A stretch of 64,000 nt of DNA, from positions 310,001 through 374,000 of the IMG/VR virus record IMGVR_UViG_3300023174_000033; one strand, given 5' to 3'. Under the pieces are notes generated by a model. The model was given only the letters and a program-made list of their open reading frames with translations. It had not been told where the DNA came from and made no database searches. The number at the start of each line of letters is the position of its first letter. Positions within the stretch are counted from its first letter, which is position 1. The position numbers and the translations under genes were made by a program. Shown in pieces: positions 6,448 to 46,862 of the stretch.

Positions 6448-7403
6448 ATACTTAAAATTCTACTCACAATTTCGTCAGTTGAGTCCTTCCAATCCATCTT
6501 GACAACTTTACTTTTTTCAACAAAATTTTTAATATCAGAAATCTCTCCAGACATAACACCCTTTTTTTCTAATGATATTGCATTACAACTCTGTTCATAC
6601 TGACCATATGTTGGAACTAACATCAATTTCTTACCCAAATAAAGTGCCTCAACCGAAGTTTGAAAACCACCAGCTGTTACTATACCGTGACAATTCCTCA
6701 AACTTTCCTCAAATCTATCTTTATCAATTGGTCTAACAACATTATTTTTGAAAAAAATTGGTTTTTTAATATTTGTAAAAATCTCAAATTTTACAGATCT
6801 TAATTGAGACACCTCTTTTACAATTGTTTCTATATCATATGTTGGTAAATAAACTGTATAATGTCCATAATCGTTTGGACTTATATACATCAAATTATCT
6901 CTTATGATCGGAGTATAAATAAAATCATCATATGATTCAAAATGTAAACCTATTGGGTGAGTTACCGGTACTAATTTTTTAAGTAATAATTCGCCAAAAA
7001 GATTTTTGTTTTTTGGCCTTGGTGTTTTATTGGATAAAAAAGAACATTGATTACTTAACCCAATACAGATTTTATCTTGTCTTTTAGCGGCCCAAGCAGT
7101 TATTGGTTCGTAATCGGAAATTATCAAATCATAATTACTTAAATCTAATTTGATATCACTCAAGAATTCTTTAATTTTCAATTCTTTAAAAGTCTTCCAA
7201 TAATTTATACCCCCTTTGCCATTATAATAAAAAGTTAAACCTCTTAAATTCCACTTTATTGGAAAGGGGAACTTGACCTGTGAGTTATTACCAGACGTTA
7301 ATATATCTACCATACAACCCATTTTTATCAGTCTGTTTATTACTTTTGCTGATCTTGTTAAGTGTCCGTTACCAGTTGATTGAATTCCATAAAGTACCCT
7401 CAT
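6444..7403 (-). CDS. Glycosyltransferase, MJ1255/VC2487-like (GT-B)
   Basis: MRVLYGIQSTGNGHLTRS, ISDYEPITAW, AGGFQTSVEALYLGKK and GQYEQSCNA motifs. Confidence 0.85.
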   Translation of the reverse strand: MRVLYGIQSTGNGHLTRSAKVINRLIKMGCMVDILTSGNNSQVKFPFPIKWNLRGLTFYYNGKGGINYWKTFKELKIKEFLSDIKLDLSNYDLIISDYEPITAWAAKRQDKICIGLSNQCSFLSNKTPRPKNKNLFGELLLKKLVPVTHPIGLHFESYDDFIYTPIIRDNLMYISPNDYGHYTVYLPTYDIETIVKEVSQLRSVKFEIFTNIKKPIFFKNNVVRPIDKDRFEESLRNCHGIVTAGGFQTSVEALYLGKKLMLVPTYGQYEQSCNAISLEKKGVMSGEISDIKNFVEKSKVVKMDWKDSTDEIVSRILSI

Positions 7404-8128
7404 TTTACGAATTTTAATTTTATATTACCATCAAGATCTTCAATGATATAAGAACAACTTTCACAAAAATCCCCAGTGTTGTAATATTCACCTTCTTCAA
7501 TTTCAGGACTGTGAGTGTGTCCTATCATAATTGCATCGCAATTTTTTTCTTCAATTAAAGTTTTGGATACTTTCTTATACTCTGATAAGAATTTTATAGC
7601 ACTCTTTACTTTTGACTTCATATAGGCAGAAAAAGACCAATATTCCAATTTAAATAACCTTCTAAACCAATTATAAATCTTGTTTATAGTTATTGATAGT
7701 TCGTAAGAAACATCACCTAACCAGTATAGCCAAGGACTAATTCTAACGAATCCATCAAAACAATCACCGTGGGTTAGATAAATCTTATCACCCTTGACAG
7801 AATCGTAAATATATTCATTGCAAATAAGTATATCACCGAAATAAATATTTTGCTCATCTATAACACTTCTCACATAGTAGTCATGGTTTCCAAGGATGTA
7901 AACAACTTTAACACCTTTCCTTGATAATCTTAAAACTTTTTGTATAACTGTAGAATGATCTTTATGCCAATAAAACTTTCTTTTCAAATAAGTCATATCA
8001 ATAAAATCACCCACAATAAACAGGTTTTCAAATTCATATTCCTTGAAAACATCAAGTAATTTAGTTGCTTGGGAATTTGGATTTCCAAGGTGTATATCAC
8101 TTATGAAAAGAGTTTTAATTTTATCCAT
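7400..8128 (-). CDS. LpxH/YbbF-like metallophosphoesterase (UDP-2,3-diacylglucosamine diphosphatase family)
   Basis: Calcineurin-like motifs SDIHLG, GDFID, GNHD, HGDCFD, GHTH and NTGD. Confidence 0.85.
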   Translation of the reverse strand: MDKIKTLFISDIHLGNPNSQATKLLDVFKEYEFENLFIVGDFIDMTYLKRKFYWHKDHSTVIQKVLRLSRKGVKVVYILGNHDYYVRSVIDEQNIYFGDILICNEYIYDSVKGDKIYLTHGDCFDGFVRISPWLYWLGDVSYELSITINKIYNWFRRLFKLEYWSFSAYMKSKVKSAIKFLSEYKKVSKTLIEEKNCDAIMIGHTHSPEIEEGEYYNTGDFCESCSYIIEDLDGNIKLKFVK

Positions 8129-8172: not shown

Positions 8173-8664
8173 ATGAACCTGTATCCTCAAGAAGAACTTG
8201 ATAGAATTAATAAAGTAAAGGAAACTAATGATAAATTAGAGGAATATTTCAATCAAAGAAGAGACGAGTGGAACAAGAATTTGGAACCTTTATTTGAGGT
8301 TATTAGAAACCGTTTAACGATTGATAATTCTTCAAAAGTATTTGAATCACAATCAATCGCTTTGAGTTTTAGGCAACAGATAAATGAACAAATTTCATTT
8401 TTTCTTAACAAACGATCAAAGGAAGAAGTTAAGATTAAAAGAATAAGACAAGATAAATTTGTATTTTACGCTCTTGGAATTGGTTTAAAAACAAATGCTG
8501 GTGAAAAATCTACTTTGATAGATGCCCATTTGGCTGAAAATGATAGAACTATACTCTTAATTGATAACTATGTGGAATTTTTAAGGAGTTGTTCCAAGAA
8601 TCTTGAGAGTCTTGGTTATACTATCAAGAATATTATTGAACTTATGAATTATCTTGGTGGATAA
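8173..8664 (+). CDS. uvsY: UvsY-like recombination mediator
   Basis: Helical 163 aa protein. C-terminus YVEFL...LGYTIKNIIELMNYLGG resembles the T4-like UvsY C-terminus, and UvsW is in the same window. Confidence 0.55.
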   Translation: MNLYPQEELDRINKVKETNDKLEEYFNQRRDEWNKNLEPLFEVIRNRLTIDNSSKVFESQSIALSFRQQINEQISFFLNKRSKEEVKIKRIRQDKFVFYALGIGLKTNAGEKSTLIDAHLAENDRTILLIDNYVEFLRSCSKNLESLGYTIKNIIELMNYLGG

Positions 8665-9798
8665 TTAGAGTTGAGATAATGCTTGATCTACTAAATCATG
8701 ATAACCTTGATAATCATTGTCTCTTTTTATATCTTCCAACATCACTTTTAATAACTTTCGTCTGCTATCAAAATCTGGATAATAACTGTCACCACTAGTA
8801 GAAGTTAATTCAATACAATTTTTACCTGGTACATTGTGTAGTTTTCCATTAGTAGTATTCAAAAGTGCTAATGTGTCTACAAAGGGATAATTTTTGAAGG
8901 TCCAATTTTCAAGTTGAACATTTATATGTGATAAATAAACCTTGTCGTTGTAATTGAAAAATACAGATTCCCAAGCATCGGACGAGTTTTTATTTTTCAT
9001 AACCCACCTTTTTTCCTTAGCATAGTTTTTGAATTTTAACATATCACTATCATTTGCACAATAAATTCTATCCATAAAATATTCAGCAGGACACCCATCT
9101 ACTTTCTTTTCCAATTTCCAAACTAAAGCTCTTCCCAAAACTTTATTATCTTGATTTACATAAACAAGTAATTGACAAACCTCTGGATTTTCTTTGTAGA
9201 TACCAAAATATCGTTGACAAGGTGTGTATCTCATACAAGAAGCTCCTAATTGACCTTTGTCTGGATAAGCATAATTCATAAAATCATAATAGTAAGGTAT
9301 TTCATCACCCTTTACTATTTTGAAATCATTAGATACTACTACAAATTGAGATTTATATAAATTTACAAAGTCTTCATAATCTTTTGGGGTCAAATCTTTT
9401 AGATCAACATTCAAACTTGACATTTCTAAATCTCCAATAACATCAGGATGGGTTAGTAATGAACGAGCAAATCTACCAACACCAACAGTTCCTCTGCCTG
9501 GTGCTTCATAAAATTTTGACTCATCTTCATCCCATTGCATCGGTGTTCTTTTAGCTCTTTGGTCTGATAAAAATGAAACCATTTCCGGCTCATTAGTCAC
9601 ATCAATCCAATTTTGTGGAAGATCTTTAGCAATATAATATTCATCGCTAAAAATAACATATAATATTTCAGCTATTTTACTTTTATCTCTTATCTTATTT
9701 AATCTTGTTAAAAATTCATGAGATGCATTCAAATCGTTTTCTAAAATCAAAGAAATGACTTGTTTCTCTAAAATGAACCCATCAAAATTATTTATCAT
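8665..9798 (-). CDS. Phage protein of the SCM/GRALxW/MDRIY/YPxxDT family (paralogue of 10992-12239)
   Basis: GQLGASCMRY, LGRALVW, FMDRIY and YPFVDT. Likely ATG at 9798 just after the TAATATATA motif. Confidence 0.7.
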   Translation of the reverse strand: MINNFDGFILEKQVISLILENDLNASHEFLTRLNKIRDKSKIAEILYVIFSDEYYIAKDLPQNWIDVTNEPEMVSFLSDQRAKRTPMQWDEDESKFYEAPGRGTVGVGRFARSLLTHPDVIGDLEMSSLNVDLKDLTPKDYEDFVNLYKSQFVVVSNDFKIVKGDEIPYYYDFMNYAYPDKGQLGASCMRYTPCQRYFGIYKENPEVCQLLVYVNQDNKVLGRALVWKLEKKVDGCPAEYFMDRIYCANDSDMLKFKNYAKEKRWVMKNKNSSDAWESVFFNYNDKVYLSHINVQLENWTFKNYPFVDTLALLNTTNGKLHNVPGKNCIELTSTSGDSYYPDFDSRRKLLKVMLEDIKRDNDYQGYHDLVDQALSQL

Positions 9799-9829
9799 AA
9801 ATTTATATATTATTTTCAAACTTTATTAA

Positions 9830-10040
9830 ACCAACGGAGTAAAACACTTGTCAATTAGGATAGTGTAAAAACAGTTCTCGGAAACTTACGGGATATAAAT
9901 AGCACAGAATGTCTGACCCTGGCTATAGATCCTACATCATGCTTGTAGGAACGTTCAAGTTGAGGTAAAAACCGTTAACCCTCGCAACTAATTAGACACC
10001 CTTACCCTCTAAAAGTCTGAAAGAAATTTCAGACTTTTTT
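9830..10040 (+). ncRNA. Candidate structured non-coding RNA
   Basis: ORF-free, GC-enriched intergenic segment with five hairpins, two possible pseudoknots and a strong terminator. Not recognised as a known family. Confidence 0.5.
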
Positions 10041-10045
10041 TTTTG
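10011..10045 (+). terminator. Rho-independent terminator
   Basis: AAAAGTCTGAAA-GAAA-TTTCAGACTTTT followed by a long T tract. Confidence 0.85.
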
Positions 10046-10072
10046 TTTTAATAAATCTTTGCGTTACCTTTG
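10042..10072 (+). promoter_or_regulatory. Bacteroidota-type primary sigma promoter
   Basis: TTTG (10042-10045), 19 nt, TACCTTTG (10065-10072). Confidence 0.75.
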
Positions 10073-10094
10073 TACTACCAAATAAAAATACAAT

Positions 10095-10970
10095 ATGTCA
10101 ACATTCCTAACATCACGCGGATATACTAAATACAACAAGGCTCTTCTTTTCAACAAGATTGATGCTATTGAAATCTTTCAACAAGGTTCACAGGTAATTA
10201 CCAAATACTTCAATAGGATTATTAATAATACTCCGGTATCAGACCGTTATGAGATTTTTGATATCCGATCATTTATGAAGTCAAAAATTGATTATCTTGA
10301 ATCAAATTTCAACATCACTTATTCAAACCTACGAATTCGTGGGGGTATTCAAGAATTGATCCTCCTTTCTGACGAGGTTGAAATTGCTGGAATAAATTTC
10401 CATAAAGCTTTTTTCATTCTTAATTCCACTGATAAATCTCGTCGTTTGAGTATGAATCTTGGTCTTTATCAGGCCGATAATGGTGTATATCTTGTAAATT
10501 CAATCAAGAATTTCTCACTTATCACCAAACACCTTAAAGGTATTACAGATAAAGCTGAAACAGCAGCTCAAAACATTGATGTTGAAACGTTTGACGAACA
10601 AATTCAATCAATCAGGTCACTTGTTGGTGAAAGAGTAATGATGTCACAAGTGAGGAATATAATCATTGACAAAGACCAAAAAGTCAATCATAATAAGTTT
10701 GATGCTCTTAAAAACAATCTTCGGTGGAACCATTCAAAGCAGTTCACCAAGGAACAAATTGGTGTACTTACTACCCCTAGTGAGAAGTTAAATTTTGACC
10801 CAAGTATTGATTTTTCAATTGATGCTTTTCAAGTATTCCAAGCTTATATGAATGTATTCAGAAACCAAGATTCTTATGTTGTCCGTAAGGAAACTGAAAA
10901 GATTTTGAATATCACACAGTGTTTTATTCGCGATGAAAAATTAGCACAACTTTTTGATTTGTTTGATTAA
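10095..10970 (+). CDS. DUF932/DUF945-like phage early protein
   Basis: FILNSTDKSRRLSMNLGLY...NG...KHLKG resembles the DUF932 NSHDG..GxxR.vC.NG..H pattern. Confidence 0.45.
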   Translation: MSTFLTSRGYTKYNKALLFNKIDAIEIFQQGSQVITKYFNRIINNTPVSDRYEIFDIRSFMKSKIDYLESNFNITYSNLRIRGGIQELILLSDEVEIAGINFHKAFFILNSTDKSRRLSMNLGLYQADNGVYLVNSIKNFSLITKHLKGITDKAETAAQNIDVETFDEQIQSIRSLVGERVMMSQVRNIIIDKDQKVNHNKFDALKNNLRWNHSKQFTKEQIGVLTTPSEKLNFDPSIDFSIDAFQVFQAYMNVFRNQDSYVVRKETEKILNITQCFIRDEKLAQLFDLFD

Positions 10971-10983
10971 TATTCTATATTTG
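10953..10983 (+). promoter_or_regulatory. Bacteroidota-type primary sigma promoter
   Basis: TTTG (10953-10956), 19 nt, TATATTTG (10976-10983); ATG at 10992. Confidence 0.7.
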
Positions 10984-10991
10984 TAACCACT

Positions 10992-12239
10992 ATGTCATAT
11001 ATAAGAAAAACTGCCGATATTATAACTTCAAATGAGTTAGACTTTGTTTTACATCAAATAAAAGACCATTCTTTGGTTGCTAAATTGCTCTTGAAGCAAA
11101 GACACCCAATTGAAGATTTGGTGGATGGTCATGTGAACTATATCTCAATTTCTAATTCAGATAAAACAAAGATTTCTTATCTGACAAAAGAGAGGGCTGA
11201 ATCAATAATACAATCTTCTCCATATGGTGAGGGCGCTGATGAACTATGGAGTTCAAGTCGGAGGTTCCATGTGAAGCCGGGATCTTTTATCAGCAAAATA
11301 TTTAAAAAAGTTTCGTTAGAGGAAGTTCAAAAATTTTCAATTCTTTTCAGAAATATTCAAAATAAAATTGAATATAACTTCAATGTAGTAGATGGTTCAA
11401 AATTATCCCATTACTACCATTTCAATTCCTATCTTTCGGAAAGTGGATCACTTGGTTGTTCTTGTATGAAATACGATCAGTGTCAAGATTATTTGGATTT
11501 ATACACCAAAAATTCAGATATTATAAAAATGTTGGTAATGACTGCTGATAATGGTCAGTTGATTGGTCGAGCACTTCTTTGGGAATTTAATGGTAATAAA
11601 ATTATGGATAGGATTTATACGATTGATGATGATACTTATCAGTATCAATTCAAAAAATGGGCGGATAATAATGAATATTTATATAAAAAGGAGCAAAAAT
11701 GGAATAATGGATTATTCTTTGAATCAAATGGTAAAACGATTTATAAGGAACTATCTGTTAAATTAGAAAATACCAAATTTGAATACTATCCATACTTGGA
11801 CACATTTAGGTTCTTGGATACTAAAACTGGCACACTTTATAACTACAAACCAACTGACACAACCACTCTTTATAATATCAAAACTTTATCATCCGCAGAT
11901 GGTTCTACCTATGGTTACGATCATTTGATGTTGTGTGATAAGACTAAACAATTCTTCCCTTATGCAGACACAACATATCTTGAATATTGTGGAATACGTG
12001 TGTGTCATAATATATGTGTTTACTCCGATATCTTTGATACAAGTATTTTGAGAGAAGATGCTCTCTATGATCCAAATGTTAATGATTGGATTTTTAAAGA
12101 CCCAGAATTTAATAATGAAATTCTTTTAGATAGTGTAAGAAAAACAAAAAAAGAGTTTGGTTCAGTGATGGAAAATTTTTACCAAGATATTTCACGAGCA
12201 GTAGACGAGACTGTTCAGATTGTTGAATCTCCATTCTAA
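10992..12239 (+). CDS. Phage protein of the SCM/GRALxW/MDRIY/YPxxDT family
   Basis: GSLGCSCMKY, IGRALLW, IMDRIY and YPYLDT; paralogue of 8665-9798. Confidence 0.7.
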   Translation: MSYIRKTADIITSNELDFVLHQIKDHSLVAKLLLKQRHPIEDLVDGHVNYISISNSDKTKISYLTKERAESIIQSSPYGEGADELWSSSRRFHVKPGSFISKIFKKVSLEEVQKFSILFRNIQNKIEYNFNVVDGSKLSHYYHFNSYLSESGSLGCSCMKYDQCQDYLDLYTKNSDIIKMLVMTADNGQLIGRALLWEFNGNKIMDRIYTIDDDTYQYQFKKWADNNEYLYKKEQKWNNGLFFESNGKTIYKELSVKLENTKFEYYPYLDTFRFLDTKTGTLYNYKPTDTTTLYNIKTLSSADGSTYGYDHLMLCDKTKQFFPYADTTYLEYCGIRVCHNICVYSDIFDTSILREDALYDPNVNDWIFKDPEFNNEILLDSVRKTKKEFGSVMENFYQDISRAVDETVQIVESPF

Positions 12240-12270
12240 ACAAATAGATAATGTTTTGTATATACATTAT

Positions 12271-12999
12271 ATGAAAGATTATGTTTTTGATAAATTAAAA
12301 TTTTTTGACGAAAATCCAAAATTTATTTTTAATGAAAAATATCATAGTTATACTTATGATGGGAATAAATTAACATCAGTAACTAAATTTATTCAAAGAT
12401 TTAAAAAAGAATTTGATTCCGAGGGAATTTCAAAAAGAATATCCGACGAAACTGGATTGAGTCAAGAAGCAATATTGGAGGATTGGAAAAAAATCAACGA
12501 TAGAGCTAACGAAATAGGACATGCGACACATGCTTGGATTGAGAATTTCTTCAAAGGAGTTTATCAACCAATACCAAGAGACTTTGAAATTATTGACAGG
12601 ATTGATAAATTTAATAAAATTTATTACGAGAAAATACATAAACTAACACCTATCAAATTTGAACAGAGAGTATTTTCAACAAAGTGGAATTTAGCTGGAA
12701 CCTTTGATGCTTTGTTTTCATATCAAGATAAATTAGTTATTGTAGATTGGAAAACAAACAAAAAGTTTGATACATCAAGTAATTGGAATAAAAAGTTACT
12801 AACCCCCTTTGATAGTGAAGATGAATGTAAATTAACTGAATATTCCATTCAGATTTCTTTGTACGCTTTAATGCTGGAGGAAGTTGGTTTAGAAATAAAA
12901 AATGGTTTAATCCTACATATCGGACCAGAAGGTGAGCCAAACCTTTACAAATTCAAAGACTATCGAGAAATATTGAGAAATTATTTAGATGGTTTATAA
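12271..12999 (+). CDS. PD-(D/E)XK exonuclease (lambda-exo/RecB/Cas4-like)
   Basis: SVTKFI, GHATHAWIE, E...AGTFDAL, IVDWKT and Q..LY motifs. Likely ATG at 12271. Confidence 0.8.
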   Translation: MKDYVFDKLKFFDENPKFIFNEKYHSYTYDGNKLTSVTKFIQRFKKEFDSEGISKRISDETGLSQEAILEDWKKINDRANEIGHATHAWIENFFKGVYQPIPRDFEIIDRIDKFNKIYYEKIHKLTPIKFEQRVFSTKWNLAGTFDALFSYQDKLVIVDWKTNKKFDTSSNWNKKLLTPFDSEDECKLTEYSIQISLYALMLEEVGLEIKNGLILHIGPEGEPNLYKFKDYREILRNYLDGL

Positions 13000-45224: not shown

Positions 45225-46862
45225 TCAAATGTTCATCTTGAGTACCTTATATGGATACTCTCTCTTTTTATAAAACTTTTCTCTTTCCAAGAAATGTTTA
45301 TAGAGTATATTGTTCATATTATTTGAATCAAACACATCCACTAAATCAAAAATCGTTGCAACTTTCTTTTGGTTGTGTTTTCTTAAAGCTCTTCCGATTG
45401 ATTGGATTATTATTTGTTCAGATTTGAAAGAATCAGCAAATATAACATTGAAAATCGCATTTATTGACACACCTGTTGATAATGTGCCATAAGATGCGAC
45501 TAGAACTTTAACATTACCATCAGTTTTTTCCATTTCCTTTTTTATAAACTCTCTTTGTTTATTATTTACTTCACCATCAATATAAAAGAATTCTTTATTT
45601 GATATTTCCGATTTCAATTTATTATAAATTTTGGTTCCATACTCAATCGTATGGAACAATAGGAGAGTATTGGAATCACATTTATCAACAATTTTCTTTA
45701 TAAAATCTAATCTTTTATCAGATTGTTGTATGAATTCTTTTTCAAACCTAAAAGCATCAGCACCAGCTCCCATCTTTTTTATATAGTTCAATCTTTCATT
45801 AATCTCACCGGAATCATGATTGAGGATAACCGCTTTAATATTCATCGGAGTGATTGTGCCAGTATCCACAAGTGTTTTAGCATCAATTTTAGTCACATTT
45901 GGACCCAATACTGATTGTATTGTTAAAATCTCAAGACTATCATCCGATGGAAATGTACCACTTACACCAAACCTATTATAAGCGTGTGTAAATGTCCTTT
46001 TTAATATTGAAGTAAGTGTTGTAGATTTTGCACCGTGAGCCTCATCACAAGCAACTGTGTGAAATTGTTTAAAAAATTCTTTTGGCCATTTTTCTAATGA
46101 TTGATAACAACCAATGTAAATGTTTGGTTGAGTGGGACCTGAATATTTTCGTGGCTTATCACTCATTATTTCTTCCATTCGGATATGACAAGGATTATAA
46201 TTTTCATTTGATTCTTGAATCCTCTCAATTTTATGTTCTCTGAAATCTAATACATCACTAAATTTCTCAAGAAAATTTGAACCATAATTGTATTCCATTA
46301 TATTTTCATAAAATTGTGTAACAAGGGTAATTGATGGCACAATAATTAAAAATTTAGCATCAGGTTCTATGTTTTTCAACACATAAAAAATGATAATTGA
46401 TATAACTAAAGATTTACCACCAGAGGTAGCAACCTCGGCCATACAATATCTATTCTTTAATATTTTATAAGCAGTTTCAATTTGATAATCATAAGGTGTA
46501 AAAGGAATCCATTCACCGGTATTTTTATTTTTCATTTTATGGTCCTTGAAAAATTCTTCACAGAACTCCTTCACGGACTCCAACGTAACATCACGATTCA
46601 GTGGGAATTCATCTTTATTTTCAATTTTGAAACTTACTCCTATTTCTTTACAAGCTTTGAAGCATTCTCTCCACAATCCAAAATTAACCTTACCGTTATC
46701 AAAATAAGATTGTTGACCATTCCAAACTCCCATCTTAAATGCGGGCATAAACCGATAACCTTTTACATGGCGTGTAAGCCAAAGGTTAAGTTGGTGATAT
46801 TCAGTTCTAGTTGATTCTTGAACTAATAATTTTTCTTCATTTTGGTCGTATTTGAGAATCAT
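45225..46862 (-). CDS. uvsW: UvsW-like SF2 DNA helicase
   Basis: PYDYQ, ATSGGKS, DEAH, SGT, STGVSI and QSIGRALR. Confidence 0.9.
   Translation of the reverse strand: MILKYDQNEEKLLVQESTRTEYHQLNLWLTRHVKGYRFMPAFKMGVWNGQQSYFDNGKVNFGLWRECFKACKEIGVSFKIENKDEFPLNRDVTLESVKEFCEEFFKDHKMKNKNTGEWIPFTPYDYQIETAYKILKNRYCMAEVATSGGKSLVISIIIFYVLKNIEPDAKFLIIVPSITLVTQFYENIMEYNYGSNFLEKFSDVLDFREHKIERIQESNENYNPCHIRMEEIMSDKPRKYSGPTQPNIYIGCYQSLEKWPKEFFKQFHTVACDEAHGAKSTTLTSILKRTFTHAYNRFGVSGTFPSDDSLEILTIQSVLGPNVTKIDAKTLVDTGTITPMNIKAVILNHDSGEINERLNYIKKMGAGADAFRFEKEFIQQSDKRLDFIKKIVDKCDSNTLLLFHTIEYGTKIYNKLKSEISNKEFFYIDGEVNNKQREFIKKEMEKTDGNVKVLVASYGTLSTGVSINAIFNVIFADSFKSEQIIIQSIGRALRKHNQKKVATIFDLVDVFDSNNMNNILYKHFLEREKFYKKREYPYKVLKMNI

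What the first reader, a model, noticed from the sequence alone, without database searches (positions are those of the whole stretch)
9830..10040. Unannotated ~190-nt multi-hairpin, possibly double-pseudoknot RNA with its own terminator
Seen: the largest intergenic gap, with no ORF in the track and enriched in GC. It folds by eye into H1 9844-9866, H2 9876-9893 (UCUCG/CGGGA), H3 9899-9926 (AUAGC-A-CAG/CUGGCUAU), H4 9930-9950 (UCCUACA/UGUAGGA) and H5 9958-9989 (AGUU-GAGG/CCUC-GC-AACU). The H3 loop UGUCUGA (9910-9916) pairs with UUAGACA (9992-9998), and the H5 loop CCGUU (9972-9976) pairs with AACGG (9833-9837). A palindromic TATATA core lies upstream and a strong terminator downstream, and the next gene has its own promoter, so this looks like a stand-alone transcript. 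Inference: a ribozyme-like or scaffold RNA; I do not recognise the family.
Basis: partly seen in the sequence, partly recalled or inferred. Interest (0 to 1): 0.75.

Follow-up and report, generated by a model that had tools for sequence, protein, structure and literature searches.

The report
Structured small RNA of jumbo phages
The gap holds a real gene for a compactly folded, abundantly expressed small non-coding RNA that is conserved in a group of giant freshwater phages, matches no catalogued RNA family, and has an unknown job.

Summary
The window lies in a 464,605-bp freshwater jumbo-phage record. The gap at 9,799-10,094 has no reading frame, and its + strand folds better than shuffles. 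I found 20 distinct homologues, all on large phage contigs. The core is 84-87% identical where third codon positions of the next gene are 52-54% identical.

A closing stem P1 holds a four-way junction with arms P2-P2a, P3-P4 and P5. P3-P4 carries a conserved 17-nt bulge with a GNRA-type mini-hairpin. A pseudoknot joins 9888-91 to the P5 loop at 9972-75. An intrinsic terminator follows in every clade.

H1, H2, H3 and both proposed pseudoknots do not.

Two independent metatranscriptomes cover only about 9864-10005, at word depth up to 89, while the flanking genes read 0.

Rfam 15 (4,227 models), ARAGORN and T4 rnaC/rnaD give no match. Downstream genes differ between clades and carry their own promoter-like motifs. 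I found no antiterminator signal.

It is most likely a stand-alone, trans-acting structured RNA. Its biochemical role remains inference.

The parts
9804..9811 (-). AATATATA promoter-like motif of the divergent gene, whose likely start is ATG at 9798 on the - strand.
   Evidence: The motif occurs upstream of 99 of 382 ORFs in the genome, peaking 11-35 nt before the ATG. Its orientation and distance fit the - strand gene (sequence).
9840..9845 (+). Candidate -10 hexamer of the RNA gene (TAAAAC here; TATAAT or TATAAC in close relatives), 4 nt before P1.
   Evidence: Alignments. This is inference only: the consensus scan found no full sigma-70 promoter here.
9850..9858 (+). P1, 5' strand (GUCAAUUAG). 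It pairs with 9988-9997.
   Evidence: Each clade has complementary flanks of different sequence (for example AAUCUUG/CAAGAUU and AAAUCUUAG/CUUAAGAUUU). Cognate duplexes average -7.7 kcal/mol against -4.3 for non-cognate pairs.
9863..9866 (+). P2, 5' strand (GUGU). It pairs with GCAC at 9902-9905.
   Evidence: Invariant in 19 of 19 sequences, so there is no covariation. RNAalifold predicts it on its own. The U.G pair marks the + strand as the RNA strand.
9873..9886 (+). P2a hairpin (AGUU / loop CUCGGA / AACU).
   Evidence: 97-99% paired. Two pairs switch among UA, CG and UG.
9888..9891 (+). Pseudoknot, 5' strand (ACGG). It pairs with CCGU at 9972-9975 in the P5 loop.
   Evidence: 3-6 bp in all 19 sequences. 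Four sequences from two clades have GCC(A/U).. with ..(A/U)UGGU in place of CGG with CCG. 84% paired on the unfitted alignment.
9902..9905 (+). P2, 3' strand (GCAC).
9907..9912 (+). P3, 5' strand (GAAUGU). It pairs with ACGUUC at 9951-9956.
   Evidence: 82% paired on the MAFFT alignment and 90% on the model-fitted one. 4 of 6 pairs change on both sides (GC/AU; UG/UA/CG). RNAalifold predicts it.
9913..9929 (+). Conserved 17-nt bulge (CUGACCCUGGCUAUAGA) between P3 and P4. It contains a 3-bp mini-hairpin (9919-21 with 9926-28) whose loop is GCAA or GUAA (GNRA type) in most relatives and GCUA here.
   Evidence: CUGG and AUAGA are invariant. RNAalifold predicts the mini-hairpin, and it is 96% paired but nearly invariant.
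9930..9950 (+). P4 hairpin (7 bp) with the seven-base loop UCAUGCU (UCAAGCU in L112 and L160).
   Evidence: 96% paired. Three pairs show four pair types. The loop is invariant apart from one base.
9951..9956 (+). P3, 3' strand.
9962..9983 (+). P5 hairpin (GAGG/CCUC) with a 14-nt loop that carries the pseudoknot 3' strand (9972-9975).
   Evidence: The stem is invariant in 19 of 19. Loop pairing is shown.
9988..9997 (+). P1, 3' strand (CUAAUUAGAC, with A9994 bulged).
9864..10005 (+). Stretch present as abundant RNA in two independent metatranscriptomes.
   Evidence: Runs X23 and X26 cover only this stretch (word depth 3.7 and 50-89), and the flanking genes read 0. The contigs abut adapter letters at 9864 or 9868 and at about 9998-10005.
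10011..10044 (+). Intrinsic terminator (12-bp stem, GAAA loop, T run).
   Evidence: Every one of the 17 homologues examined has a terminator of its own sequence 0-30 nt after P1.
10042..10072 (+). TTTG-N19-TAccTTTG, a promoter-like element for the next gene (ATG at 10095).
   Evidence: CTTTGTA is invariant in close relatives. A similar TATATTTGTA stands before the same gene in relatives where the RNA is not directly upstream. The promoter reading is inference.

Best explanation
This is a gene for a stand-alone small non-coding RNA of a clade of freshwater jumbo (myovirus-like) phages.

The primary transcript probably runs from about 9850 to the T run at about 10044 (some 195 nt). It is read from its own promoter and stopped by its own intrinsic terminator. 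The folded core (9850-9997) is a four-way junction closed by P1:
- Arm P2-P2a.
- Arm P3-P4, with a conserved 17-nt bulge that holds a GNRA-type mini-hairpin, and an invariant seven-base end loop UCAUGCU.
- Arm P5.
- A pseudoknot that ties the internal loop of the P2 arm to the P5 loop.

The order of the helices and the loop-to-loop contact give a cloverleaf-like topology.

Shown: conservation, the fold, the terminator, the single copy, and high RNA abundance relative to neighbouring genes.

Inferred: the RNA acts in trans as a rigid, shape-specific particle. Its invariant unpaired bases (P4 loop, bulge, GUGUAAAA) would be read by a protein or other partner, as a scaffold or decoy. This is favoured over extended base pairing and over control of the next gene.
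For: Conservation:
- 20 distinct homologues, all on large phage contigs of up to 476 kb from fresh water.
- The core is 84-87% identical where third codon positions of the adjacent gene are 52-54% identical.
- No frame is open in the stretch.

Structure:
- On an unfitted MAFFT alignment 92.9% of cells pair, against 31-46% when partners are slid.
- 12 pairs change on both sides, against 5-6 when slid and 9.1 in shuffles (4 of 500).
- On the model-fitted alignment 22 pairs change on both sides (0 of 500 shuffles).
- RNAalifold on its own returns P2, P2a, P3, P4 and P5.
- P1 cognate duplexes beat non-cognate ones.
- The pseudoknot shows a sequence swap in two clades.

Strand: invariant or frequent U.G pairs, the terminator orientation, and adapter orientation all point to the + strand.

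Autonomy:
- A terminator is present in every clade.
- Immediate downstream genes belong to at least five unrelated families, and most have their own AATATATA-like motif just before the ATG.
- There is no antiterminator signal.

Expression: two metatranscriptomes from different studies cover only the RNA.

Copy number: one copy in the 464-kb genome.
Against: - Nothing here shows a partner or a trans effect, and the host is not cultured.
- The cDNA inserts begin at 9864-9868, so the P1 5' strand is not seen as RNA. They end at about 9998-10005, before the terminator. These ends may reflect processing or the usual loss of ends in library making, and I cannot tell which.
- For the window's own sequence the nested conserved model costs -21.4 kcal/mol against -33.5 for the single-sequence optimum.
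- P2, P5 and the mini-hairpin never vary, so they rest on prediction alone.
- The 20 sequences fall into only about seven clades, and no R-scape test was run.
- P1 could not be tested column by column.
Confidence: 0.5

Rival explanations
1. It is a base-pairing regulatory sRNA. An invariant exposed stretch, such as the P4 loop UCAUGCU (complement AGCAUGA, which would cover a start codon), pairs with phage or host mRNAs, and the rest of the fold only stabilises the RNA.
For: It has its own terminator with a U tail, as in many bacterial sRNAs. The seven-base loop is invariant. The RNA is abundant.
Against: About 50 invariant bases spread over junctions and bulges are far more than a seed needs. 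AGCATGA is not enriched at gene starts in the genome, and the only second copy of the 11-mer is a chance match inside a coding region. The loop changes to UCAAGCU in two clades. The terminator hairpin, which Hfq-type sRNAs need, is absent from the cDNA. The host transcriptome is unknown.
Confidence: 0.15
2. It is a cis-acting riboswitch or protein-dependent attenuator. A P1-closed aptamer is followed by a terminator that gates read-through into the genes downstream.
For: The architecture resembles four-way-junction aptamers: P1 closure, a pseudoknot, conserved junction bases, and a terminator 0-30 nt after P1. The next gene is always on the same strand. In the window and in L071, the P1 3' strand can pair with the terminator's 5' half (z = -1.9 and -2.6).
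Against: That alternative pairing is not conserved: z is near 0 in the other 12 sequences, and it is lost in L083, a close relative of L071. Downstream genes are unrelated between clades: DUF932-like, a 363-aa unknown, an 80-aa unknown, a 101-aa unknown, dNMP-kinase-like, and a 138-aa unknown. Promoter-like motifs lie between the terminator and the next ATG. No read-through RNA is seen where the RNA itself has depth 50-89.
Confidence: 0.1
3. It is a ribozyme, self-cleaving or otherwise.
For: It has a complex junction-plus-pseudoknot fold with many invariant unpaired bases. The cDNA 5' ends cluster at 9864-9868, just inside a conserved U-R-G-U-G-U element.
Against: No Rfam ribozyme model matches, even at E up to 10. 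The 5' ends are ragged (9864, possibly 9865, and 9868), and the ordinary loss of 5' ends in cDNA libraries explains them as well. No catalytic core motif was recognised.
Confidence: 0.07
4. It is not an RNA gene. The stretch would be a conserved DNA element (origin, promoter cluster or protein binding site) or a chance fold.
For: It lies in a replication and recombination neighbourhood: UvsY-like, SbcD-like phosphoesterase, PD-(D/E)XK nuclease.
Against: Compensatory changes keep RNA helices, including U.G pairs that would be A-C on the other strand. RNA-only coverage appears in two metatranscriptomes. A terminator is present in every clade.
Confidence: 0.03

Closest known systems
Phage T4 small stable RNAs rnaC and rnaD (species 1 and 2 RNAs)
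   Same: They are phage-encoded, abundant, stable, structured RNAs of 119-139 nt with unknown function, in a large myovirus that also has UvsY-type recombination genes.
   Different: The covariance model finds nothing at rnaC or rnaD. The T4 RNAs sit inside the tRNA cluster, and rnaC carries a tRNA-like GGGTTCGAATCCCGG arm. This RNA is about 100 kb from the nearest tRNA gene and has no such arm.
tRNA and tRNA-like modules (for example the tRNA-like domain of bacterial Y RNAs or tmRNA); the comparison of topology rests on general knowledge
   Same: There are four helices around one junction in the order closing stem, arm, long arm ending in a seven-base loop, arm. A tertiary pairing joins the loop regions of the second and fourth arms.
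   Different: The core is about 148 nt, not 76. ARAGORN calls no tRNA or tmRNA. There is no T-loop consensus and no CCA-type 3' end. Position 2 of the seven-base loop is C rather than the U expected at the matching position of an anticodon loop (sequence).
Four-way-junction riboswitch aptamers with a pseudoknot (for example SAM-I); general knowledge
   Same: It has P1 closure, four helices, a pseudoknot from one arm, conserved junction bases, and an intrinsic terminator right after P1.
   Different: There is no Rfam match, no conserved antiterminator, and no common downstream gene function. The next genes carry their own promoter-like motifs.
Candidate structured RNAs (csRNAs) predicted from IMG/VR by Fremin, Bhatt and Kyrpides 2023 (PMC10690425)
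   Same: The catalogue holds 8,495 unnamed, uncharacterised covarying motifs from the intergenic regions of the same virus collection. All or part of this RNA may be among them.
   Different: I could not check this: no supplementary files are held, and no paper in the library contains its sequence. Their motifs are 29-151 bases long, with a mean of 67, which is shorter than this RNA, and none is described with this fold.
phi29 packaging RNA (pRNA); general knowledge
   Same: It is a phage-encoded, protein-binding structural RNA of similar size that works as a shaped particle rather than by base pairing.
   Different: There is no sequence or fold similarity, and no Rfam hit. The phage type is different, and nothing links this RNA to packaging genes.

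Membership tests
Any Rfam 15 family (4,227 models) | Score at or above the family's gathering threshold. | tested here: not met
   There were 0 matches in the whole window and 0 in eight homologous loci. At E up to 10 only terminator-driven chance hits appear, at 25 bits or less against thresholds of 50-100.
tRNA | Recognised by a tRNA finder, meaning cloverleaf dimensions plus conserved D-loop and T-loop bases. | tested here: not met
   ARAGORN finds no tRNA in the window. It does find 7 elsewhere in the genome, none near this locus.
tRNA | Order of four helices around one junction, with a contact between the second and fourth arms. | tested here: met
   P1, P2-P2a, P3-P4 and P5, with a pseudoknot between the P2 internal loop and the P5 loop. 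This is a resemblance of topology only.
tmRNA | A tRNA-like domain plus a tag reading frame, as detected by ARAGORN. | tested here: not met
   none found.
T4 rnaC / rnaD | Similarity of sequence and structure. | tested here: not met
   Model R1 with filters off gives no hit at rnaC or rnaD. The best score in the 5-kb T4 stretch is 7.5 bits, elsewhere in it.
T4 rnaC / rnaD | Location within a tRNA gene cluster and co-processing with tRNAs. | tested here: not met
   The RNA lies at genome position 319.8 kb. The nearest tRNA genes are at 222.6 kb and 427.2 kb.
Riboswitch (transcription-terminating) | A conserved, complex aptamer-like fold closed by P1. | tested here: met
Riboswitch (transcription-terminating) | Mutually exclusive terminator and antiterminator pairing, conserved across members. 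| tested here: not met
   The duplex of the post-P5 segment with the terminator's 5' half is no better than shuffles in 12 of 14 sequences.
Riboswitch (transcription-terminating) | Downstream genes share a function tied to one ligand. | tested here: not met
   The immediate downstream genes belong to at least five unrelated families.
Riboswitch (transcription-terminating) | Binds a small ligand. | not testable with these tools
   This needs in-line probing or transcription assays.
Small self-cleaving ribozymes (hammerhead, twister, twister-sister, pistol, hatchet, HDV-like, glmS) | A match to the family's core fold and sequence. | tested here: not met
   No such Rfam model matches, even at E up to 10.
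Small self-cleaving ribozymes | Site-specific self-cleavage. | not testable with these tools
   The cDNA 5' ends at 9864-9868 are compatible with cleavage but are equally explained by library artefact.
Hfq-type base-pairing sRNA | A terminator hairpin with a U tail retained in the mature RNA, and a conserved seed with targets. | tested here: inconclusive
   A terminator is encoded but is not seen in the cDNA. The phage genome shows no enrichment of sites complementary to the P4 loop. The host is unknown.
Intrinsic (Rho-independent) terminator | A G+C-containing hairpin followed by a T run, on the strand of the gene. | tested here: met
   Seen in the window and in all 17 homologues examined, each with a different stem sequence.

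The most novel reading that the evidence does not exclude
The RNA would be a new class of functional RNA particle: a cloverleaf-shaped, pseudoknot-locked molecule made in large amounts by jumbo phages. It could be a mimic or decoy for a host factor that recognises tRNA-shaped RNAs (for example a tRNA-cleaving defence nuclease or a processing or modification enzyme). Alternatively it could be a ligand-binding or catalytic RNA with no known relative. Weak hints only: in single clades a glutamyl/glutaminyl-tRNA synthetase gene (L074) or a T4 Rnl1-type RNA ligase gene (L160) lies 1-1.4 kb downstream.
Probability: 0.12. Interest if true: 0.85.

Novelty: new variant of a known kind. Interest (0 to 1): 0.6.

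Why it matters
Phage-encoded stable RNAs of unknown function have been known since T4's species 1 and 2 RNAs, and very few have been explained.

This case has several things in its favour:
- A well-defined, complex fold: a four-way junction, a pseudoknot and a GNRA-type hairpin.
- About 50 invariant bases.
- 20 natural variants.
- Evidence from the environment that it is among the most abundant transcripts of its phage.

RNAs of this complexity are usually riboswitches, ribozymes or dedicated protein partners, so it is a concrete and tractable target for structure determination and partner hunting. Jumbo phages of fresh water, probably infecting Bacteroidota, have almost no functional annotation, which adds to its value.

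If the RNA proves to be an ordinary sRNA, the gain is a new RNA family and a corrected secondary structure.

Tried and rejected
- Rfam at gathering and at permissive thresholds, on the window and on homologues, gave nothing.
- ARAGORN found no tRNA or tmRNA.
- blastn against 50,697 GenBank phage records found no match.
- T4 rnaC and rnaD were fetched and searched with the model: no match.
- A pattern scan of 185,579 prokaryote species' genomes gave one chance hit in a cyanobacterial MAG that the model does not confirm. There is therefore no sign of a cellular or prophage copy.
- Paralogues in the genome itself: none. A second copy of the 11-mer CATCATGCTTG at genome position 427.7 kb is a chance match inside a coding region.
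Pseudoknot 2 was rejected because 9833-9837 is not conserved.
- H3 (GC-A-CA with UG-GC) against P2 (GUGU with GCAC): both are invariant. H3 would cross P3 with no linker between the strands, so P2 is preferred. This is inference.
- Antiterminator pairing is not conserved.
- A mini-ORF starting at the AUG in the P4 loop (9 codons) is broken by a stop in L068-type sequences (read from the alignment).
- An all-column scan for further covarying pairs was too noisy with about seven clades, apart from P3.
- The neighbouring proteins F0 and F1 gave no Pfam or PHROG hit. By language-model features F1 resembles DUF932 and F0 resembles phage-only families. Nothing links them to RNA.
- A literature search by sequence and by topic found no description of this RNA.

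Full report
WHERE IT LIES. The window is positions 310,001-374,000 of a 464,605-bp virus record, 98% complete by CheckV. The phage is AT-rich at about 30% GC and myovirus-like, with baseplate wedge and hub proteins. Around the finding it carries replication and recombination genes: a UvsY-like mediator, an SbcD-like metallophosphoesterase and a PD-(D/E)XK nuclease. DNA runs that hold the sequence are lake and other freshwater metagenomes.

THE OBSERVATION. Between the divergent gene on the - strand and the next + strand gene (ATG at 10095), no frame exceeds 39 codons from stop to stop. GC rises to 0.40. The + strand of 9826-10042 folds at -52 kcal/mol, z = -3.35, and the - strand gives z = -1.43. 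A 12-bp terminator with a T run lies at 10011-10038.

HOMOLOGUES.
- Searches with the two flanking proteins found syntenic phage contigs in which the intergenic stretch is 78-84% identical.
- Pattern scans of the viral and metagenome collections, filtered with nhmmer and covariance models, raised the set to 20 distinct sequences in about seven clades.
- All lie on phage contigs of up to 476 kb.
- One pattern scan of one genome per prokaryote species found no true copy.
- GenBank phages have none, and the genome itself has a single copy.
- The core is 84-87% identical to close relatives, while third codon positions of the adjacent gene are 52-54% identical. It remains 66-76% identical in clades whose neighbouring proteins are no longer recognisably related.

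THE FOLD.
- H1 is 57% paired, H2 70%, H3 78% with no double-sided change, and outer H5 68%.
- The H3-loop/9992-9998 pseudoknot is 53% paired.
- The proposed partner of the H5 loop (9833-9837) is unconserved sequence upstream of the RNA.

What is conserved is the following.
- P1 (9850-58 with 9988-97). Its sequence differs entirely between clades yet stays complementary. Cognate flanks give -7.7 kcal/mol against -4.3 for flanks from different clades.
- P2 (GUGU 9863-66 with GCAC 9902-05). It is invariant.
- P2a (9873-76 with 9883-86). UA, CG and UG exchange.
- P3 (9907-12 with 9951-56). This helix is new. It was found in an all-column scan, and 4 of its 6 pairs change on both sides.
- P4 (9930-36 with 9944-50). 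Four pair types occur, and the loop UCAUGCU is invariant apart from UCAAGCU in two clades.
- P5 (GAGG 9962-65 with CCUC 9980-83). It is invariant.
- A pseudoknot between ACGG (9888-91) and CCGU (9972-75) in the P5 loop. It has 3-6 bp in every sequence. Four sequences of two clades carry GCC(A/U).. with ..(A/U)UGGU in its place.

On the unfitted MAFFT alignment:
- 92.9% of cells pair, against 31-46% when partners are slid by 1-3 columns.
- 12 pairs change on both sides, against 5-6 when slid and 9.1 in shuffles (4 of 500).

On the alignment fitted to the model, which leans towards it, 22 pairs change on both sides (0 of 500). RNAalifold on its own returns P2, P2a, P3, P4 and P5. It also returns a 3-bp mini-hairpin inside the conserved 17-nt bulge, whose loop is GCAA or GUAA in most relatives.

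U.G pairs (invariant in P2, frequent in P3 and P2a) would be A-C on the other strand, so the + strand is the RNA. Single-sequence folding of the window prefers other pairings (-33.5 against -21.4 kcal/mol for the nested conserved model). This explains why reading one sequence by eye went astray.

EXPRESSION. No RNA run holds the phage itself, but four runs hold words of the conserved core. When the runs were laid on 9000-11000 at 80% or higher likeness, they split into two kinds.
- The two runs that are probably DNA cover genes and RNA evenly, at depth 2-7.
- The two true metatranscriptomes (a riverine one from 2018 and a freshwater one from 2025, from different studies) cover only about 9864-10005, at word depth 3.7 and 50-89. 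Every bin over the flanking genes reads 0.

Their contigs, from several sequence variants, run directly into Illumina adapter letters at 9864 or 9868 on one side. On the other side they do so at 10005, or at the equivalents of about 9998-10005. These are therefore short, discrete inserts. The adapter type on the 5' side fits a + strand RNA if the library is of the usual stranded kind.

The inserts lack the P1 5' strand and the terminator. I cannot tell whether this reflects processing or the known under-representation of transcript ends in cDNA libraries. The stated ends are therefore minimum bounds.

AUTONOMY.
- All 17 homologues examined have an intrinsic terminator, each with its own sequence, 0-30 nt after P1.
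- The gene just downstream differs between clades: DUF932-like (by language-model features) in the window clade, a 363-aa unknown, an 80-aa unknown, a 101-aa unknown, a dNMP-kinase-like protein, and a 138-aa unknown.
- The RNA does keep one syntenic position, between a small metallopeptidase-like gene and the DUF932-like/F0/nuclease block.
- Most downstream genes are preceded by a copy of AATATATA. This motif stands 11-35 nt before the start codons of 99 of 382 ORFs in the genome.
- In the window clade a conserved TTTG-N19-TAccTTTG element stands there instead.
- The 'TATATA core' upstream of the RNA is the minus-strand copy of the AATATATA motif. It sits 5 nt before the in-frame ATG at 9798 of the divergent gene, so it belongs to that gene.
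- The RNA's own promoter is probably the TATAAT-like hexamer at 9840-45, which would start transcription at the first bases of P1. This is inference.
- A test for antiterminator pairing between the post-P5 segment and the terminator's 5' half gave z near 0 in 12 of 14 sequences.

WHAT IT IS. It is a stand-alone gene for an abundant, compact, structured small RNA. I hold that much with confidence of about 0.85.

How it works is inference. About 50 invariant bases are spread over loops, bulges and junctions. There is a rigidifying pseudoknot and a GNRA-type hairpin. I found no conserved target complementarity and no cis-regulatory logic. Together these favour an RNA that is recognised by its shape, acting as a protein-binding scaffold or decoy. 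I give that specific reading about 0.35. The overall confidence of 0.5 blends the two figures.

The helix order and the contact between the second and fourth arms recall a tRNA cloverleaf. It is not a tRNA, however: ARAGORN is negative, there is no T-loop consensus or CCA end, and it is twice the size.

The rivals are a base-pairing sRNA (0.15), a riboswitch or attenuator (0.10), a ribozyme (0.07), and a DNA element or chance fold (0.03).

COMPARISON AND NOVELTY.
- No Rfam 15 family matches.
- T4 rnaC and rnaD, the closest analogues in kind, do not match the model.
- A 2023 catalogue of 8,495 unnamed candidate structured RNAs from the same virus collection may contain all or part of it. Its files are not held and no paper contains the sequence, so prior listing cannot be excluded. 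No description of this fold or of its expression was found.
- I file it as a new variant of a known kind, phage-encoded stable structured RNA, and not as a member of any known family.

Noticed in passing
Whole genome (G000); in the window, for example 9804-9811 (-): The motif (T)AATATATA lies 11-35 nt before the start codon of 99 of 382 long ORFs. It looks like a phage-specific promoter with very short leaders, recalling the T4 late promoter TATAAATA.
   Followed up: partly
Whole genome (G000): Shine-Dalgarno-like sequences are almost absent before start codons (11 of 382 ORFs). TAnnTTTG is mildly enriched, with 23 of its 51 occurrences beginning 11-20 nt before the start codon. Both fit a Bacteroidota host.
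   Followed up: partly
L022:8543-9478 (+), contig IMGVR_UViG_3300008459_000008: In one close relative a 311-aa ORF is inserted between the divergent gene and the RNA. It carries a type IX secretion C-terminal sorting domain (Por_Secre_tail, E = 3.8e-08), a domain I take to be typical of Bacteroidota. This is another hint about the host.
   Followed up: partly
window 8665-9819 (-) and 10992-12239 (+): The 384-aa and 415-aa proteins on either side of the RNA and DUF932-like gene pair are paralogues (one blastp family). They have no Pfam or PHROG match and resemble only phage proteins. The listed TTG start at 9819 of the first is probably wrong: the in-frame ATG at 9798 follows the promoter motif.
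   Followed up: partly
L074:9039-10529 (-), contig IMGVR_UViG_3300027749_000448: A phage-encoded class I glutamyl/glutaminyl-tRNA synthetase (496 aa, E = 4.8e-70) lies about 1 kb downstream of the RNA in this relative. A 627-aa SPFH/Band 7 protein lies just upstream.
   Followed up: no
L160:2486-3808 (+) and L160:118-708 (-), contig IMGVR_UViG_3300042566_002057: A T4 Rnl1-type RNA ligase (440 aa) lies 1.4 kb downstream of the RNA, and an HD-domain (HD_4) protein lies divergently upstream.
   Followed up: no
window 10095-10970 (+) and 12220-12999 (+): The gene after the RNA resembles DUF932 phage/plasmid proteins by language-model features only. The third gene downstream is a PD-(D/E)XK nuclease (E = 3.4e-06). 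With the UvsY-like protein (8173-8664) and the metallophosphoesterase (7400-8128), this looks like a recombination module.
   Followed up: partly
Genome positions 46,112; 122,154; 123,126; 222,412; 222,562; 427,193; 427,324: The phage carries seven scattered tRNA genes: Trp, Cys, Arg, Gln, Glu, Ile(tat) and Met. None is in the window.
   Followed up: no
L073:941-1010 (-), 476-kb contig IMGVR_UViG_3300032236_002285: In this relative the RNA is followed by two intrinsic terminators in tandem.
   Followed up: no
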